This document shows, one piece after another, positions 20,972 to 57,045 of a stretch of DNA of 64,000 bases (its first letter is position 1; every line of letters starts with the position of its first letter). The DNA lies in IMG/VR virus record IMGVR_UViG_3300021142_000002, positions 1 to 64,000 of that record; one strand, given 5' to 3'. The translations under genes were made by a program, and so were the position numbers. The notes below the pieces were generated by a model. That model saw nothing but the letters and a program-made list of their open reading frames with translations, was not told the DNA's origin and did no database searches.

Positions 20972-20999
20972 AAATTTACTCCAATATACTAACATCTAT

Positions 21000-21012
21000 T
21001 AGATAATGTATA
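21000..21012 (-). promoter_or_regulatory. Putative early promoter motif TATACATTATCTA
   Basis: Exact motif also at 36645 and 42063, with variants at 24315, 25280, 43214 and 47917, always shortly upstream of a minus-strand gene. Confidence 0.65.
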
Positions 21013-23521: not shown

Positions 23522-23550
23522 TAGATAGACTCCCTTAGGGAGTCTATCTA
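23522..23550. terminator. Palindrome, 14-bp arms, 1-nt centre
   Basis: TAGATAGACTCCCT-t-AGGGAGTCTATCTA. Confidence 0.7.
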
Positions 23551-23717
23551 GAAGAATGGTTACTTAATGCACTGCTAAAATATTGATCGACGTTTAAGAT
23601 GATAAGTTTTTGTTTTTGTTCTTCAGTAAGAACCAACTGTGATGGCTCTAATGGGTGTCGGCAGAACCGATAAAATCTACTCGCTTCAATAATTTTGGCT
23701 TGAGGAATTCTAGCCAT
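23544..23717 (-). CDS. Small hypothetical protein (57 aa, not in ORF track)
   Basis: AGGAG RBS then MARIPQAKIIEASRFYRFCRHPLEPSQLVLTEEQKQKLIILNVDQYFSSALSNHSSR*. Confidence 0.45.
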   Translation of the reverse strand: MARIPQAKIIEASRFYRFCRHPLEPSQLVLTEEQKQKLIILNVDQYFSSALSNHSSR

Positions 23718-23743
23718 TCCTGTCTCCTAAAAAAAAATATAAA

Positions 23744-23765
23744 GTGGGAGGTTTTACCCTCCCAC
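23744..23765 (-). terminator. Conventional intrinsic terminator
   Basis: GTGGGAGG-6nt-CCTCCCAC followed on the minus strand by a T-tract. Confidence 0.7.
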
Positions 23766-23777
23766 CAACACGATGGA

Positions 23778-24242
23778 CTATTTTAGTCCGATATAATCAT
23801 CGTGTTTAAATACAGCGGTTTTGGTTACAACACCTGTAACAGGGTCGGTTGTTTCCACACTTTGGCGAACTGAAAAGGCGTGCACCACGGTGAAGCCGGC
23901 TTTCTCAAGCATAGGGATTAAGTGATGTAATAACCCTCCATGGCCCCCTACCATTACAGTGGTGGCAATTGAGAGGATGTGGCGTGCATCCTCTCTATCA
24001 GGTTGAGGGAAGTTCCCGTTCCCGTCGGTCCACACATTTTTGAGGTACTCATGTACCTCCCCATAGCGCCATTCTTGCGCTAAAGCGGTAATCAGGGTTG
24101 CCCTTTCGAGCAACTCCGCTTTGGTTAAAGCTGAGCCAAGGGTCAGCGCAGTTTTCAGGACTTCTAGTTGTTGACCTTGAAGGTCAACAACTTCAACTTG
24201 ATCAGCCGTTCTTTGGTGTTGCGTGGCGTTTAAAATTTTCAT
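23778..24242 (-). CDS. Csx20-like/CARF-like protein, candidate cyclic oligoadenylate ring nuclease
   Basis: N-terminal HxxTxxQ, central VMVGG...GFTVVHAFSVR and C-terminal SVE...GVVTKTAVFKH resemble my recollection of the Csx20 consensus. Locally GC-richer. Confidence 0.5.
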   Translation of the reverse strand: MKILNATQHQRTADQVEVVDLQGQQLEVLKTALTLGSALTKAELLERATLITALAQEWRYGEVHEYLKNVWTDGNGNFPQPDREDARHILSIATTVMVGGHGGLLHHLIPMLEKAGFTVVHAFSVRQSVETTDPVTGVVTKTAVFKHDDYIGLK

Positions 24243-24314
24243 ATCAAATCTCCTGCCTCTATGAGGACTTTAAAAGTTATGGTAAGTTGGATTACTTATA
24301 TAAGTTAATCCATT

Positions 24315-24327
24315 AAAATAATATATA
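24315..24327 (-). promoter_or_regulatory. Putative early promoter variant
   Basis: Minus strand TATATATTATTTT upstream of the 24242 gene. Confidence 0.45.
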
Positions 24328-24373
24328 CATGAAATTTTTTTTGAATCCATTTTAAACAAAAAAAAACATAGAA

Positions 24374-24407
24374 TAGATAGAGTAGGGTATATACCCTACT
24401 CTATCTA
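24374..24407. terminator. Perfect loop-less 34-bp palindrome
   Basis: TAGATAGAGTAGGGTAT|ATACCCTACTCTATCTA. Confidence 0.75.
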
Positions 24408-24412
24408 ATTAG

Positions 24413-24604
24413 TTAACTTTTGCCAGATTGTCGATAAGCTATTTTTAGCTTTCTAATATCTTCTTGATCTTTAGGCCTATTAAGGGACTTCTTTTGCAGC
24501 AGCAATTTAAAGATTGAATAACAGGTAATGCCTTCAATAAATTTATGAAATACTTCTGGCGGTACTGTAGCATCTGTGAGTAGGTGCGGTAAAGAATTTA
24601 CCAC
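24413..24604 (-). pseudogene. Short ORF or fragment resembling a nucleotidyltransferase-like C-terminus
   Basis: LLLQKKSLNRPKDQEDI motif. No good start codon/RBS; the nearby ATG at 24614 is out of frame. Confidence 0.3.
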
Positions 24605-25247: not shown

Positions 25248-25279
25248 TTTAGTTTCTCCTAAAGATTATTAATATCCTA

Positions 25280-25292
25280 TAAATAATATATT
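25280..25292 (-). promoter_or_regulatory. Putative early promoter variant
   Basis: Minus strand AATATATTATTTA, 33 nt before ATG 25247. Confidence 0.45.
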
Positions 25293-25310: not shown

Positions 25311-25344
25311 AGTGAGTATAGTAGCCTAGGCTACTATACTCACT
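25311..25344. terminator. Perfect loop-less 34-bp palindrome
   Basis: AGTGAGTATAGTAGCCT|AGGCTACTATACTCACT directly after the portal stop codon. Confidence 0.75.
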
Positions 25345-42031: not shown

Positions 42032-42062
42032 TGTTTCTCCTATAAATGATATTGATATCATT

Positions 42063-42075
42063 TAGATAATGTATA
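42063..42075 (-). promoter_or_regulatory. Putative early promoter TATACATTATCTA
   Basis: Exact motif 32 nt upstream of ATG 42031. Confidence 0.65.
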
Positions 42076-42419: not shown

Positions 42420-42451
42420 TTTTTTTTTCTCCTAAATAAAAAACATAATTC

Positions 42452-42483
42452 AGATAGAGTGGGGCATATGCCCTACTCTATCT
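42452..42483. terminator. 32-bp palindrome with one mismatch
   Basis: AGATAGAGTgGGGCAT|ATGCCCtACTCTATCT. Confidence 0.7.
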
Positions 42484-42489
42484 ACTGTA

Positions 42490-43152
42490 TTAGCCCTTTA
42501 ATACTGATTGGAATTTCTTGGCCATGGCTGGATCAATGGCCTCCATGGCAGTAATTGCATCATTAAGACGCTTTACAGACCAAGCCTCCTTCACATCGTT
42601 TAACGACTGACCATAAATGCCAACTTGGCCCAACCATTGCAATGCTTCTTGCTTCCATTCAGGATGGTCTTTAAATAGAGGAAAAAGATTTTTCTGCCAA
42701 GGTGTAGCATCACGCTTACGTGCATCATGATACTCTAGCACCTTCATTGGTCTAATATCTGCCAGAGCTGCAAACCAATCTGGAATGGTGTCACGATTTC
42801 CTTCACGAACATAATAGAAACTTTTTCCATCGGGAAACTCCTGAATCAGTTCTTTATCTCCATTTTCTGACCACCAGCCGATTTCTCGACCTTTAAGGGA
42901 TTTAACCCAATCCCATGTAGGCTCAAATTTCTCAACCTGAGTTTCAATCTCCAAGTTTTTAGGATTGATTACTTCTAGTTGATGGCCAACTAATTTGCCC
43001 TTCATCTTGATGGGTACCGTTTTTAACAGCCCAGTTCCAAACTGAGGATTCTCTAAAGGATACTGATTATCGGCTGCAACCATCTTTGCAATTGCAGCCA
43101 ACACTAAAGGCCGGGTAAGGCCACTTACTTTAAATTCAGAACGATATTTCAT
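42490..43152 (-). CDS. Hypothetical protein
   Basis: Probable start MKYRSEF after GGAG; locally GC-richer. Confidence 0.6.
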   Translation of the reverse strand: MKYRSEFKVSGLTRPLVLAAIAKMVAADNQYPLENPQFGTGLLKTVPIKMKGKLVGHQLEVINPKNLEIETQVEKFEPTWDWVKSLKGREIGWWSENGDKELIQEFPDGKSFYYVREGNRDTIPDWFAALADIRPMKVLEYHDARKRDATPWQKNLFPLFKDHPEWKQEALQWLGQVGIYGQSLNDVKEAWSVKRLNDAITAMEAIDPAMAKKFQSVLKG

Positions 43153-43181: not shown

Positions 43182-43215
43182 TAATTGGAATAATCACTAG
43201 TGATTATTCCAATTA
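43182..43215. repeat. Perfect loop-less 34-bp palindrome overlapping an early-promoter motif
   Basis: TAATTGGAATAATCACT|AGTGATTATTCCAATTA. Confidence 0.75.
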
Positions 43216-43226
43216 GATAATATAAA
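43214..43226 (-). promoter_or_regulatory. Putative early promoter variant
   Basis: Minus strand TTTATATTATCTA. Confidence 0.5.
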
Positions 43227-47885: not shown

Positions 47886-47916
47886 TTTGTTTTCTCCTAA
47901 GTAAAGTAATGTCCTA

Positions 47917-47929
47917 TAGATAATGTATC
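47917..47929 (-). promoter_or_regulatory. Putative early promoter (GATACATTATCTA)
   Basis: One mismatch to the consensus, 32 nt upstream of ATG 47885. Confidence 0.6.
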
Positions 47930-54334: not shown

Positions 54335-55654
54335 TTATTTAACAGTTTCTAAATTATGTAAACTAGCCGTACAATAATTGGCGATTGCTGAAAAAAGACT
54401 TAAAGTATGTTTATAAATGTCTAATTGTGGCTGAACAACTGAGGCTGTAGAGTAATGGATATACGTAACAGCCTTTTTAAGTACATAATAAGAATCCGTA
54501 TGTTTATCACCTTTAGCTAAAGCATCTTCTACACCGGCACATTCCTTTAATAAAGTATTAATGGCTTGTTTACCTTTAATAGCATTATTTTTATCATTAA
54601 TGACAAAATATAAAGAATTAAGCATCGCTGTTATATATTTGTCAATTTGTCTTTTAGTTAATGCCTCAAAACTTTTAACTAATCTTTTATTACCCACCCC
54701 TTCGTTCATTACCTTACAAGTTAAATAATATACCTTTTCTTTATAGGAGAATACGTTAATCATAATAAATGCGCCCCCCAACAGTGGGGATGAGCAGAAA
54801 GTATATGTTGTACCCCCATTACCGTCATTAAGAGGTTTTAATGTATTTTCTGATAAATTAGAAATTTTACTTTTTAAAACTCCAATAACATGTTCACTAT
54901 CTAAAGGATCAAATCTTTTAGCATTATCTAATATATCTGTTATTAATTTTTGTATAATTTCATAATTAATTAATCCATGAATAAATGAATGATAATCTAA
55001 TAATTGCTTATCAATGCTCGTTCCATCAACTTTTATTATTTCTTCAGCCTTTTCGGATAAGAAAATTAAACGCTCTTTAGGCCTTTTATCATCAGTATAA
55101 AATTTCTCATTAATTTTTTGGAGCACTAATAAATGAGCTTTTAATGCTACTGCTTTAATTGATAGTTTTTCAAAGAAAGTACCTATCTTATCCATAAATG
55201 CTTTAATGAAAGCTAATATTTTCTTAAACGTTTCTTTAATTGAATCAGATACACTTTCTATAGCATATTCAGTATATTTCTTTCTTCCATCTACCTCATC
55301 AATAGACTCTAATGAAGGGAATAGGATTTCTTCATCAGGAGATAATTGCTTAATAATTTTATTAGCAGCTAATGTAGCCATTATGGCTGATTGCTTATCC
55401 ATTCCATCATGATCTAATGACTTTAACATTATTTCTTTTAAAGCTTCTATTCTGGTAGTGGTATCTACCAGAATAGAAATAGCATCGTTTAAAACATCTT
55501 CTTCAGTAAGTGAGGTATATAATTCATGATCTGGTATCATTTTAAGATCATCTAAACTAACATTTTGATTCACAGTATCTCCTTGTGTTTCAGCATTTAC
55601 TTCTTCCATTAATTCTTCAATACCAGCTCTGTAACCATATATTCTTCTTAACAT
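54335..55654 (-). CDS. Internal head protein (phiKZ gp93-97 paralog family)
   Basis: Acidic propeptide with AGIE, PSLE/S and AIE/S protease-type sites; LLGG core motif. Confidence 0.7.
   Translation of the reverse strand: MLRRIYGYRAGIEELMEEVNAETQGDTVNQNVSLDDLKMIPDHELYTSLTEEDVLNDAISILVDTTTRIEALKEIMLKSLDHDGMDKQSAIMATLAANKIIKQLSPDEEILFPSLESIDEVDGRKKYTEYAIESVSDSIKETFKKILAFIKAFMDKIGTFFEKLSIKAVALKAHLLVLQKINEKFYTDDKRPKERLIFLSEKAEEIIKVDGTSIDKQLLDYHSFIHGLINYEIIQKLITDILDNAKRFDPLDSEHVIGVLKSKISNLSENTLKPLNDGNGGTTYTFCSSPLLGGAFIMINVFSYKEKVYYLTCKVMNEGVGNKRLVKSFEALTKRQIDKYITAMLNSLYFVINDKNNAIKGKQAINTLLKECAGVEDALAKGDKHTDSYYVLKKAVTYIHYSTASVVQPQLDIYKHTLSLFSAIANYCTASLHNLETVK
55257..55332. repeat. 76-bp exact repeat (copy at 56630-56705)
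   Basis: Encodes EILFPSLESIDEVDGRKKYTEYAIE, spanning two predicted cleavage sites. Confidence 0.9.
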
Positions 55655-55673
55655 AATTGTATTCCTGTTTTAA
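55596..55673. repeat. 78-bp exact repeat (copy at 56987-57064; near-copy at ~59761-59833)
   Basis: Covers the RBS and first ~20 codons of inner-head paralogs. Confidence 0.9.
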
Positions 55674-55689
55674 TAAAATATTTTCCATT

Positions 55690-57045
55690 TTATTTTTCCT
55701 TTTTAGCTGATACAACATCACTAACCTTTCCTTTTAGATTGCGCACTCTAGCCCAAATAATGTTTCTATAAGACCGAGTAACTGCCAATGCAGTTAATAC
55801 TACAGCCATGTTTGTTTTAGAAGCAGATGTAGCCGATTCAACAGCATGTTTAGAGATTGCTTTAAGTATTTCTACCTTTGTATTAGCTTCATCAACACTA
55901 TTAGTGCTGGCCTGTGACATTTCTACCTTTAGCTCAGACATAAATTTCTTATTAGCCTCCAGTGTCTTTGCCATCATGCTATTACTATCGTAAATAAAAT
56001 CTAATAGCTTTAATAAACTTTCTATTTCTCTAATTATAGTTGATTTATTACTGGCTGGTAATTTCTCTTCAGAAGCATCAGTATGCGCCTTTCCAAGACT
56101 GACAGAAATACCTGATATAAACTCGCCTTCTTTAATTGAAGATTCTAGGAGTTTAATAGTTATAAAAATACCACCTAAATATTGTTCAGATTGAAATAAT
56201 TTTGTCGCAGTATTATAAGTAAATTTAATACCATAGGTGGAAAAGTCACTAGCTTCAACTGAAGCCATATTAACTGAACCTTCTTTTAAATGCTTAAATA
56301 TTTTTTCTTCAATAACTTTAGAAATTTTAGTATTGAAGTCTGACATACCAGCTAACATTCCAATTAACTTAGTAATTCCATCATCCGGAAAAAATACATG
56401 TCCAGCAGTAAGGTTTTTAACATCATTTTTTGAAACAGTGACTTCTTTTTCAGCAGCACCTTTACTCTCATCAATTTTTTTAGCAAATATTAGAACTCCC
56501 TTTATTAAGGTTTTATCAAATTTACTTTTAGTAATGATTTTATTAAAAAATTCTTTAGCTTTCTCTATAAATGTATTAATTAATCTAAAAACATTTTTAA
56601 TAGCATTTTCAATACTTTCACCTAAAGACTCTATAGCATATTCAGTATATTTCTTTCTTCCATCTACCTCATCAATAGACTCTAATGAAGGGAATAGGAT
56701 TTCTTTATTTTCAGGCAATGTATTACTCATTAGCTTATTAACTGCAAAGGAAGCAAAAATAGCTGATTGTTTATCTAGACCACCTTTGTTCAATGACTGA
56801 ATCATTAGATCACGAATAGCCTCTAAACCCTCTGAAGTATCCTCTGCCTGAGATAATGCATCGTCAACCACTTCTAAATCGCTGCTAGCAATGAGTTCAT
56901 CTTCCGGAAAGGTTGGCATTTCTTCATCAACAGCATTTCCAAATTCCTCTTCCTCTTCTGGAGTTACTTTATATAATTCATGCTCGTTTACTTCTTCCAT
57001 TAATTCTTCAATACCAGCTCTGTAACCATATATTCTTCTTAACAT
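55690..57045 (-). CDS. Internal head protein (phiKZ gp93-97 paralog family)
   Basis: Same N-terminal 20 aa as the previous gene; EGLE/A, PSLE/S and AIE/S sites. Confidence 0.7.
   Translation of the reverse strand: MLRRIYGYRAGIEELMEEVNEHELYKVTPEEEEEFGNAVDEEMPTFPEDELIASSDLEVVDDALSQAEDTSEGLEAIRDLMIQSLNKGGLDKQSAIFASFAVNKLMSNTLPENKEILFPSLESIDEVDGRKKYTEYAIESLGESIENAIKNVFRLINTFIEKAKEFFNKIITKSKFDKTLIKGVLIFAKKIDESKGAAEKEVTVSKNDVKNLTAGHVFFPDDGITKLIGMLAGMSDFNTKISKVIEEKIFKHLKEGSVNMASVEASDFSTYGIKFTYNTATKLFQSEQYLGGIFITIKLLESSIKEGEFISGISVSLGKAHTDASEEKLPASNKSTIIREIESLLKLLDFIYDSNSMMAKTLEANKKFMSELKVEMSQASTNSVDEANTKVEILKAISKHAVESATSASKTNMAVVLTALAVTRSYRNIIWARVRNLKGKVSDVVSAKKEK

What the first reader, a model, noticed from the sequence alone, without database searches (positions are those of the whole stretch)
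23778..24242. Candidate phage-encoded Csx20-like ring nuclease (anti-type III CRISPR) behind an early-type promoter
Seen: a stand-alone 154-aa gene, visibly GC-richer than its surroundings, with its own promoter-like motif and terminator. Its motifs (QHxxTxDQ; VMVGG..; VVHAFSVR; SVE..GVVTKTAVFKH) parallel, from memory, the Csx20 pattern (SHxLTxEQ; VLIQG; PVYATTxR; E..DGxVxKxSxFKH). Established: nucleus-forming jumbo phages evade DNA-targeting CRISPR but stay sensitive to RNA-targeting type III systems. Csx20-type CARF proteins have been reported as cOA ring nucleases. Inference: this may be an anti-CRISPR distinct from the AcrIII-1/DUF1874 family that closes that vulnerability.
Basis: partly seen in the sequence, partly recalled or inferred. 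Interest (0 to 1): 0.75.

Follow-up and report, generated by a model that had tools for sequence, protein, structure and literature searches.

The report
Jumbo-phage Csx20-like ring nuclease candidate
A nucleus-forming jumbo phage from freshwater carries a foreign-looking small gene from the Csx20/MJ1673 family, enzymes shown to destroy the alarm molecule of type III CRISPR immunity, placed behind a predicted early promoter; this is a plausible but untested way for such phages to block the one CRISPR type known to reach them.

Summary
Window 23778-24242 (-) is an intact 154-aa gene and the GC-richest of 215 ORFs in a 220-kb phage record. It has a terminator directly after its stop codon and an AGGAG ribosome-binding site.

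The phage is a chimallivirus (chimallin, PhuZ-like tubulin, phiKZ-type capsid).

The protein belongs to Pfam PF27247 (MJ1673), the family the literature calls Csx20:
- 379 relatives in an exhaustive search.
- All strictly invariant polar residues retained.
- A confident AlphaFold model whose only significant Swiss-Prot match is MJ1673.

It is a divergent member:
- 22 bits against NCBI's 70-bit Csx20 cut-off.
- A ~35-residue helical insertion.
- 12 of 44 conserved positions changed, including the loop after strand 4.

Its promoter-like motif matches the mapped early (virion RNA polymerase) promoter template of phiKZ-related phages. It is part of a ~110-nt leader repeated before other GC-rich orphan genes.

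The most likely function is an early-made cyclic-oligoadenylate ring nuclease acting as an anti-type III CRISPR. Activity, substrate and host are untested.

The concept is not new: Csx20 homologs in phages and mobile elements are already published. This copy, and a second in another uncultured chimallivirus, appear to be the first in nucleus-forming phages. Verdict: new member of a known kind, moderate interest.

The parts
23778..24242 (-). CDS, 154 aa; divergent member of the MJ1673/Csx20 family (Pfam PF27247); candidate cyclic-oligoadenylate ring nuclease
   Evidence: ORF. Csx20 HMM hits. 379 relatives. PF27247 tag on a 99%-identical protein. AF2 model pLDDT 92.6. Fold match to MJ1673. Conserved residues.
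23964..24071 (-). Codons ~58-93: lineage-variable helical insertion between the long helix and strand 4. Most relatives (120-130 aa) lack it.
   Evidence: Two-block matches at residues 1-57 and 94-151 in most hits. Alignment A2. Model has helix 41-70, a loop with pLDDT ~75, then helix 83-91.
23743..23766 (-). Intrinsic-terminator-like hairpin plus T-run, directly after the stop codon
24311..24330 (-). Predicted early (virion RNA polymerase) promoter: AT-rich element TGTATATATTAT, 6-nt spacer, G as predicted +1 at 24311
   Evidence: Matches the AR9 early consensus AAATATATATTAT-(6N)-G (PMC5312081). Genome-wide placement of the pattern. The same motif class precedes the chimallin gene.
24243..24310 (-). 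Predicted ~68-nt 5'UTR, with a near-palindrome at its 5' end (about 24289-24311), a small hairpin before the ribosome-binding site, and AGGAG at 24250-24254
   Evidence: Structure is not statistically distinctive (z = -1.5).
24229..24375 (-). Full extent of the repeated leader cassette (promoter, 5'UTR and first codons), shared with at least five other sites in the genome
   Evidence: blastn against the genome: 93.8% identity over 146 nt and 96.6% over 118 nt, plus three copies at 75-79% identity and one partial copy at 81% over 58 nt. Alignment A3. 3-5x depth and assembly breaks at this point in four samples.
24374..24407 (-). Terminator hairpin of the upstream transcription unit, which isolates the gene as its own unit

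Best explanation
The gene encodes a small, probably homodimeric, Rossmann/CARF-like protein of the MJ1673/Csx20 family. It was acquired horizontally by a nucleus-forming jumbo phage and sits as an independent unit of early promoter, leader, gene and terminator.

Proposed mechanism:
1. The injected virion RNA polymerase transcribes it immediately after infection.
2. The protein stays in the cytoplasm.
3. There it binds and cleaves the cyclic oligoadenylates (most likely cA4, possibly cA3) that host type III CRISPR complexes make when they detect exported phage mRNA.
4. The cOA-activated effector nucleases are therefore never switched on.

Shown here: the gene and its flanking signals, family membership, retention of all invariant polar residues, the fold match to MJ1673, and the chimallivirus identity of the phage.

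Taken from the literature: ring-nuclease activity of Csx20, and the sensitivity of nucleus-forming phages to type III CRISPR.

Inferred: early transcription, dimerisation, substrate, and the anti-CRISPR role.
For: Family membership
- Csx20 HMM hits.
- 379 relatives at E <= 1e-3; 105 of the 115 aligned relatives hit Csx20; all carry PF27247.
- All strictly invariant residues are kept: N5, T7, Q8, H9, Q15, R126, K141, F145, H147. G99-G100 after strand 4 is also kept.
- AF2 model has pLDDT 92.6.
- MJ1673 is the only significant Swiss-Prot fold hit (E = 1.1e-4, full length).
- A viral homolog matches with TM 0.73/0.87.
- AFDB top hits are small CRISPR-associated proteins and Csx16.

Published function
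- Csx20 degrades cA4, and cA3 at higher enzyme concentration (PMC12409355).
- MJ_1673 is linked to type III-A loci (PMC3973734).

Mobile-element bias
- At least 130 IMG/VR contigs, 205 plasmids, phages RM378 and Pm86 and Fusobacterium phages carry relatives; nearest Atlas clusters are 60-82% viral.
- Every relative whose neighbourhood was examined lacks cas genes nearby.
- The Pm86 copy sits next to an RHH gene, as in the published csx20-aca14 operon.

Phage and expression
- Chimallin, tubulin and phiKZ-type capsid.
- Type III protects against such phages.
- Early-promoter match.
- The gene is intact and nearly invariant in at least four samples.
Against: - Only 22.3 bits against the 70-bit curated Csx20 cut-off, and only the C-terminal third aligns.
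- 12 of 44 conserved columns differ, including GGAP to GGHG in the loop after strand 4, loss of a conserved Ala-Gly, P39L and G149D.
- There is a ~35-residue insertion, and the protein sits on a very long tree branch.
- Foldseek finds nothing significant in the PDB.
- No family member from a phage has been assayed.
- The host is unknown, so there is no evidence it has a type III system or which effector it uses.
- In Serratia, immunity to jumbo phage ran through cA3-activated NucC, and Csx20 cleaves cA3 only weakly.
- The promoter assignment is by analogy with other phages; no transcript data exist.
- No Aca-like regulator was found next to the gene.
Confidence: 0.6

Rival explanations
1. It is a ring nuclease or phosphodiesterase whose real target is not type III CRISPR, or not only that. 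It could act on other cyclic-oligonucleotide defences such as cA3-signalling CBASS, or have a shifted specificity (cA3 or cA6) caused by the altered loop after strand 4 and the insertion.
For: - Csx20 shows some cA3 activity.
- cA3 is shared by type III and CBASS, and viral cA3 nucleases are discussed as dual anti-defence enzymes.
- The ligand-loop residues differ from the family consensus.
- Family members are abundant on enterobacterial conjugative plasmids. From my own knowledge, type III CRISPR is uncommon in those hosts.
Against: - The only biochemistry for the family shows cA4 preference.
- The family namesake and the NCBI and PADLOC models are CRISPR-associated.
Confidence: 0.17
2. It binds cyclic oligoadenylate without cleaving it, acting as a sponge by sequestration.
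For: - A sponge role was raised for the related Csx15 when no turnover was seen.
- This protein is a divergent member with a changed binding loop.
Against: All invariant His, Arg and Lys residues typical of a catalytic site are retained, and Csx20 itself turns over substrate.
Confidence: 0.08
3. It has a function unrelated to cyclic-nucleotide signalling, for example another small-molecule or RNA-end phosphodiesterase, or a regulatory nucleotide-binding protein used in phage metabolism. The Csx20 link would then be only a shared fold.
For: - The gene lies next to ribonucleotide reductase.
- MJ_1673 was once annotated as a dipeptidase-like protein.
Against: - The sequence-level family link is significant and covers the full length.
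- The gene is an insulated unit, not part of the reductase operon.
- The family is strongly biased toward mobile elements.
Confidence: 0.1
4. It is a recently acquired passenger gene with no current benefit to the phage.
For: - Strong GC and codon-usage outlier.
- Long branch.
- Other copies of the same leader are decayed: one is followed by a 9-codon stub and one is an orphan.
Against: - The reading frame is intact and every invariant residue is kept.
- It has its own promoter, ribosome-binding site and terminator.
- It is present and almost invariant in at least four, and probably seven or more, samples.
Confidence: 0.05

Closest known systems
Csx20 (CRISPR-associated ring nuclease; NCBIfam NF040559, PADLOC Csx20; Pfam PF27247 MJ1673 family)
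   Same: - Same sequence family at Pfam level.
- Same conserved blocks: N-x-T-Q-H after strand 1, M-x-G-G after strand 4, and the R...K...F-x-H C-terminal hairpin.
- Same predicted fold as MJ1673.
- Same small size.

   Different: - Below the curated equivalog cut-off (22 against 70 bits).
- ~35-residue insertion.
- 12 of 44 conserved positions changed.
- Encoded by a phage, not in a type III locus.
- Activity untested.
Published mobile-element Csx20 homologs: four phage genomes in Hoikkala et al. 2025, and the csx20-aca14 operon of Pasteurella multocida (NAR 2026, gkag862)
   Same: - Same family; the Pm86 fragment shares the MxGG, AFSxR and KTAxFKH motifs.
- Same proposed role as a co-opted anti-CRISPR.
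   Different: - Those are in temperate or ordinary phages and plasmids, and at least one is controlled by an RHH repressor.
- This one is in a chimallivirus, behind a predicted virion-RNAP early promoter, with no adjacent regulator.
- Its nearest relative is only ~36% identical.
AcrIII-1 / Crn2 (DUF1874, PF08960), the established viral ring-nuclease anti-CRISPR
   Same: Same proposed strategy: a small viral enzyme destroys cA4 before the effectors fire.
   Different: - Different family: no PF08960 match in the protein or anywhere in the phage record.
- The literature notes only a distant Csx16-DUF1874 resemblance.
Crn1 (Sso2081) and other CARF-domain ring nucleases
   Same: - Rossmann-like alpha/beta core.
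- Conserved loops after strands 1 and 4.
Crn4b, a ring nuclease also found in phages and plasmids
   Same: Small ring nuclease found both in CRISPR loci and on mobile elements, and proposed as an Acr.
   Different: Crn4 has an unrelated novel fold and broad substrate specificity.

Membership tests
NCBIfam NF040559 CAS_Csx20 (equivalog) | Whole-protein score at or above the curated cut-off of 70 bits | tested here: not met
   22.3 bits, E = 1.4e-4; residues 94-150 align to model positions 66-121 of 124. The best E-value among the 115 aligned relatives is 3.5e-14; per-member bit scores were not listed, so I infer but did not see directly that none of them reaches the cut-off either.
Pfam PF27247 (MJ1673 family) | Match to the family HMM | tested here: met
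   The precomputed PF27247 hit is on P0001, which is 99% identical over all 154 aa, and on every profile hit. The nearest ESM Atlas clusters are 83-100% PF27247. The model is missing from the local Pfam copy, so I could not re-run it directly.
MJ1673/Csx20 family | Conserved polar residues: N-x-T-Q-H...T..Q after strand 1, G-G after strand 4, and R, K, F-x-H in the C-terminal hairpin | tested here: met
   N5, T7, Q8, H9, T12, Q15, G99, G100, R126, K141, F145 and H147 are all present. 32 of 44 conserved columns are identical.
MJ1673/Csx20 family | Predicted fold equals that of MJ1673 | tested here: met
   Foldseek against Swiss-Prot AFDB: Q59067 (MJ1673) at E = 1.1e-4, TM 0.53/0.61, residues 2-154; the next hit has E > 0.1. 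BFVD homolog TM 0.73/0.87.
CARF superfamily | Significant structural match to a solved CARF or SAVED domain | tested here: inconclusive
Ring nucleases | Cleavage of cyclic oligoadenylate to linear products | not testable with these tools
   Biochemistry exists only for one cellular Csx20 (PMC12409355).
Ring nucleases (CARF-type) | Homodimer forming a composite ligand site | not testable with these tools
   Only monomer prediction was available. The long helix and long beta-hairpin are compatible with a dimer interface, but that is inference.
Cas accessory protein | Encoded in or beside a type III CRISPR-cas locus | tested here: not met
   The gene lies between ribonucleotide reductase and virion genes of a phage. 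Every relative's locus I examined also lacks cas genes.
Anti-CRISPR (Acr) | Inhibits a CRISPR system in vivo | not testable with these tools
Anti-CRISPR (Acr) loci | Adjacent Aca-type HTH or RHH regulator | tested here: not met
   The neighbouring 57-aa and 209-aa ORFs have no Pfam or PHROG hits. This contrasts with Pm86, where an RHH ORF follows the gene.
AcrIII-1 / DUF1874 (PF08960) | Match to the family HMM | tested here: not met
   No Pfam hit for the protein and no PF08960 match in the whole record.
Chimalliviridae (nucleus-forming phages) - context | Chimallin shell protein, plus PhuZ tubulin and a phiKZ-type capsid | tested here: met
   PF25677 at 47.7 bits (cut-off 27); PHROG nuclear shell protein E = 5e-34; phiKZ gp54 match E = 6e-9. 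Tubulin at 37.7 bits. Capsid relatives are all phiKZ-like. An RNAP beta-like ORF is present.
phiKZ-like early (virion RNAP) promoters | Extended AT-rich conserved element with the start site 6 nt downstream | tested here: met
   Sequence level only. TGTATATATTAT-N6-G against the AR9 consensus AAATATATATTAT-(6N)-G. 28 of 30 genome matches are intergenic. The transcription start site is not measurable here.

The most novel reading that the evidence does not exclude
The ~110-nt leader (early promoter plus 5'UTR) marks a small regulon of horizontally acquired counter-defence genes in this chimallivirus. On this reading the Csx20-like protein is its one recognisable member, and the other GC-rich orphan genes behind the same leader (168, 151, 153 and 207 aa) would be new anti-defence proteins. 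The altered ligand loop (GGHG) and the helical insertion would retune the ring nuclease toward cA3 or a broader substrate range, countering the NucC-type abortive infection that is the documented type III route against nucleus-forming phages.
Probability: 0.15. Interest if true: 0.75.

Novelty: new member of a known kind. Interest (0 to 1): 0.5.

Why it matters
Nucleus-forming jumbo phages shield their DNA from restriction enzymes and DNA-targeting CRISPR. Their exported mRNA still exposes them to type III CRISPR.

In the literature I could search, I found no dedicated counter-measure reported for these phages. A ring nuclease made from an early promoter would be exactly that, and it can be tested directly with existing assays.

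More broadly, the search shows that the Csx20/MJ1673 family is far commoner on mobile elements than the four phage isolates reported so far suggest:
- at least 130 viral contigs;
- 205 plasmids, mostly conjugative;
- Atlas clusters that are mostly viral.

Degrading cOA may therefore be an under-counted anti-defence strategy.

The shared leader in front of several foreign-looking genes also offers a simple way to pick further candidate counter-defence genes in this phage.

Tried and rejected
- Local Pfam scan of the protein and of 115 relatives: no hits, because PF27247 is missing from the local copy.
- PDB sequence search, single sequence and family profile: nothing meaningful.
- Foldseek against the PDB: no significant hit.
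- Megablast and tblastn of the window protein against the phage and plasmid collections: no match. Only more central family members retrieve hits (against 56, 57, 116, 117).
- Supplementary tables of Hoikkala et al. and the Makarova 2020 CARF paper are not held, so I could not compare against the published conserved or catalytic residues of Csx20.
- Long 'fusion' relatives: uninformative, probably low-complexity artefacts.
- Generic sigma-70 promoter scan: not above chance. Raw count of the early-promoter pattern in the window is also not above chance; only its placement is significant.
- RNA structure in the leader: z = -1.5, weak covariation. No Rfam family.
- The leader does not occur in other phage lineages; the only hits are fragments of the same phage.
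- Tree: the window protein is on a long branch and no donor can be named.
- The other leader-driven genes have no recognisable family.
- One search was a mistyped placeholder reference that returned an error and produced no data.

Full report
**Observation**

AGGAG lies 8-12 nt before the ATG.

Its GC content is 0.477. The mean over the 215 ORFs I called in the 220,366-bp record is 0.332, giving z = 3.7 and joint first place. GC3 is 0.458 against 0.247 (z = 3.5). The gene has the fourth-lowest codon-adaptation value.

A terminator-like hairpin (9 pairs, 6 of them GC, followed by a T-run) lies at 23766-23743, 11 nt after the stop codon. Another terminator at 24407-24374 closes the preceding unit, so the gene is an insulated transcription unit.

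The gene is not an assembly artefact. The locus is held by at least seven freshwater metagenome runs. In four of them a single contig runs from the ribonucleotide reductase gene through the terminator and the whole gene at the same depth as the phage backbone. The assemblies break only inside the upstream repeat. Only two differences were seen, in one run: one is A53T and the other is most likely synonymous.

**What the protein is**

Single-sequence family scans gave only weak hits, and only to the C-terminal third:
- NCBIfam CAS_Csx20: E = 1.4e-4, 22.3 bits against a cut-off of 70.
- PADLOC Csx20: E = 2.4e-4.
- Local Pfam gave nothing. PHROGs gave only one insignificant match, E = 0.069.

The word-indexed search of 5.8 billion proteins found only a 99%-identical copy and one relative at 36% identity. 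Both carry the precomputed tag PF27247.

The exhaustive HMMER search of 1.84 billion representatives found 379 relatives at E <= 1e-3. Most are 120-150 aa and match in two blocks, residues 1-57 and 94-151.

An alignment of 115 of them (A1) has strongly conserved blocks with invariant R126, K141, F145 and H147, and near-invariant N5, T7, Q8, H9, T12 and Q15. 105 of the 115 hit the Csx20 model, but the best E-value is 3.5e-14, which I take to be below the equivalog cut-off.

PF27247 is the Pfam family 'MJ1673'. MJ_1673 is a ~130-aa protein associated with type III-A loci in Methanococcales (PMC3973734).

A profile search with A1 returned 390 proteins; all of the 120 listed carry PF27247 and nearly all are unnamed.

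**Structure**

With A1 as the input alignment, AlphaFold2 gave a confident model (pLDDT 92.6, pTM 0.84). It is an alpha/beta core with short strands at 3-6, 18-20 and 95-98, a long helix at 41-70, and a long C-terminal beta-hairpin at 118-151.

- Against Swiss-Prot models, the only significant match is MJ1673 (Q59067): E = 1.1e-4, full length, TM 0.53/0.61. The next hit has E > 0.1.
- A viral protein in BFVD matches at TM 0.73/0.87 and rmsd 2.0 A.
- In the AFDB clusters, the top hits are small 'CRISPR-associated proteins' and a Csx16.
- Against solved structures there is no Foldseek hit at E <= 1e-3.
- The family profile finds no PDB sequence.

Family and fold identity with MJ1673/Csx20 is therefore well supported. 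Membership of the CARF superfamily rests on the literature, not on my comparisons.

**How typical a member it is**

Of 44 columns conserved in at least 70% of the other 114 sequences, the window protein matches 32. These include every strictly invariant polar residue.

It differs at twelve:
- It lacks a conserved Ala-Gly before V18.
- P39 is Leu and G149 is Asp.
- The loop after strand 4 reads GGHG instead of GGAP.

It also has a ~35-residue helical insertion (residues ~58-93). A minority of relatives have insertions of varying form at the same place.

In a quick maximum-likelihood tree it sits on a very long branch with no well-supported close sister. It is a divergent member with the putative active-site set intact. 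Its substrate preference could differ from that of the characterised enzyme.

**What is known about the family**

Hoikkala et al. (PMC12409355) showed that a Csx20 fully degrades cA4 at 100-fold substrate excess, degrades cA3 only at ten-fold higher enzyme concentration, and does not degrade cA6. It was the commonest ring nuclease in their type III loci (78 loci). They also found it in four of 28,114 phage genomes.

A 2026 NAR paper (PMC13551039) describes csx20 homologs in anti-defence operons controlled by an RHH repressor, Aca14, in Pasteurella multocida. It suggests they are cas genes co-opted for counter-defence.

I could tie these to the present family directly. A central family member retrieves Rhodothermus phage RM378 (47% identity, full length) and Pasteurella phage Pm86. 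In Pm86 the family fragment is followed by a 71-aa RHH-like ORF.

**Distribution**

Relatives are overwhelmingly on mobile elements:
- At least 130 IMG/VR contigs.
- 205 plasmids, mostly large conjugative plasmids of Providencia, Citrobacter, Proteus and Klebsiella.
- Three large Fusobacterium phages.
- Nearest ESM Atlas clusters that are 60-82% viral.

Five neighbourhoods of relatives that I inspected have no cas genes. They look like phage accessory regions or plasmid toxin-antitoxin regions.

**The phage**

The record encodes:
- a chimallin homolog (661 aa; PF25677 at 47.7 bits against a cut-off of 27; PHROG nuclear shell protein E = 5e-34; phiKZ gp54 E = 6e-9);
- a tubulin-family ORF;
- an RNA polymerase beta-like ORF;
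- a 781-aa major head protein whose relatives are all phiKZ-like jumbo phages, with Vibrio phages closest at 32% identity.

The published work confirms that type III CRISPR protects Serratia against nucleus-forming phages by sensing exported mRNA. In that system immunity ran through cA3-activated NucC, and the system also makes cA4.

No AcrIII-1 (PF08960) is present in the record.

Of ten other large viral contigs that carry a family member, one (269 kb) also encodes chimallin. Its copy is not sister to this one.

None of the three family queries I ran by tblastn against the isolate collection (P0164, the L038 copy and P0009) retrieved any of the roughly 140 cultured phiKZ-like phages, and the window protein itself matched nothing there. 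I found no paper reporting a ring nuclease in a nucleus-forming phage.

**Promoter**

The generic sigma-70 scan is uninformative.

Lavysh et al. mapped the early virion-RNAP promoters of the phiKZ-related phage AR9 as AAATATATATTAT-(6N)-G(+1). They state that phiKZ and phiR1-37 likewise start 6 nt after an extended AT-rich element (PMC5312081).

Upstream of the gene the sequence reads TGTATATATTAT, then six bases, then G at 24311. This predicts a 5'UTR of about 68 nt.

The relaxed pattern TAYATTAT-N6-G occurs 30 times in the genome:
- 28 occurrences are intergenic, although only 8.7% of the genome is non-coding by my ORF call (P = 7e-28).
- 24 lie within 200 nt upstream of a same-strand ORF.
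- One precedes the chimallin gene, a hallmark early gene.

The count within the window alone is not above chance. No transcript data exist.

**An unexpected feature: the repeated leader**

The ~110-146 nt upstream of the gene (24229-24375) is a repeat. Besides the target, the other copies are:
- two near-identical copies (94-97% identity), in front of ORFs of 168 and 151 aa;
- a diverged copy in front of a 153-aa ORF;
- a diverged copy followed by a 9-codon stub, with a 207-aa ORF beginning shortly after;
- one orphan copy with no gene behind it;
- a partial copy upstream of a 57-aa ORF.

In four metagenomes the read depth rises 3-5 fold exactly over this stretch.

The genes behind the leader are the GC and codon-usage outliers of the genome. 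None has a recognisable family.

The leader contains the promoter element, a near-palindrome at the predicted 5' end of the transcript, and a small hairpin before the ribosome-binding site with some compensatory variation. Folding statistics are weak (z = -1.5) and no Rfam family matches.

The leader occurs only in this phage lineage.

A caution on the GC argument: family members are GC-richer than their host genome in most viral contigs I checked. Part of the excess may therefore reflect amino-acid composition rather than recent transfer.

**Conclusion**

The most likely reading (about 0.6) is an early-expressed cytoplasmic ring nuclease that degrades type III CRISPR second messengers.

Family membership, retained invariant residues, fold, mobile-element bias, phage type and promoter class are shown or supported here. 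Catalysis, substrate, dimerisation, timing of expression and the anti-CRISPR effect are inferred.

The rivals are a different or broader nucleotide target, a sponge, an unrelated function, and a passenger gene.

Because phage-borne Csx20 homologs and their proposed Acr role are already published, this is a new and divergent member of a known kind. Its particular interest is the chimallivirus context.

Noticed in passing
window 24229-24375 (-); also genome 159405-159550, 189966-190083, 140003-140099, 149921-150017, 116844-116942, 74753-74809 (loci L098-L103): A ~110-146-nt leader (early-promoter-like element, 5'UTR, ribosome-binding site, first codons) is repeated at six or more sites. It precedes the genome's GC-rich, codon-atypical small ORFs (168, 151, 153, 207 and 57 aa), all without a known family. 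One copy is followed by a 9-codon stub and one has no gene behind it. This looks like a common expression cassette for acquired genes.
   Followed up: partly
whole genome G000; in the window at 20996-21010, 25276-25290, 42059-42073, 43210-43224, 47913-47927 (-): A commoner promoter class, TATACATTAT-CTAATA-G, typically puts the predicted start about 25-50 nt upstream of the start codon of roughly two dozen genes, including chimallin. It fits the same template as mapped early promoters of phiKZ-related phages. 28 of 30 matches are intergenic.
   Followed up: partly
window 24374-24407, 23522-23550, 25311-25344, and about 42435-42490: Terminator hairpins are long (13-15 pairs). Several share the same stem ends (TAGATAGA...TCTATCTA), so they appear to form a repeat family of their own.
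   Followed up: no
plasmid hits H4-H43, e.g. L091 Azotobacter pAcX50f, L090 Caminibacter plasmid: MJ1673/Csx20-family genes annotated only as 'hypothetical protein' are present on 205 plasmids. Most are large conjugative plasmids of Providencia, Citrobacter, Proteus and Klebsiella. On the Azotobacter plasmid the gene lies between toxin-antitoxin modules. This suggests a widespread unannotated anti-signalling gene on plasmids.
   Followed up: partly
L038 (IMG/VR contig of 269 kb, handle G002): A second uncultured chimallin-encoding jumbo phage (56% GC) carries its own family member, about 32% identical to the window protein and not its sister in the tree. This points to independent acquisitions.
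   Followed up: partly
L092 (Pasteurella phage Pm86, record end 55543-56048): The family member in Pm86 is unannotated and is cut by the end of the linear record. Only the C-terminal 66 codons are present there, directly followed by an RHH-like 71-aa ORF.
   Followed up: partly
viral loci L010, L022, L025, L053, L071, L079: In most viral genomes the family member is 5-12 GC points richer than its surroundings. Elevated GC is therefore partly a family trait and not on its own proof of recent transfer.
   Followed up: partly
phage records ON464764, ON464763, PV175345: Three 175-180-kb Fusobacterium nucleatum phages (JD-Fnp4, JD-Fnp6, JD-Fnp7) show weak matches to the family. Only the JD-Fnp4 match covers most of the query (97%, E = 6e-3); the JD-Fnp6 and JD-Fnp7 matches cover 26-29% of the query. 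I do not know whether they are among the four phage genomes counted in the published survey.
   Followed up: no
window 24413-24604 (-) and 23544-23717 (-): Two small ORFs (63 and 57 aa) flank the gene's transcription unit. The 57-aa ORF has no family hit. The 63-aa ORF was not searched.
   Followed up: no
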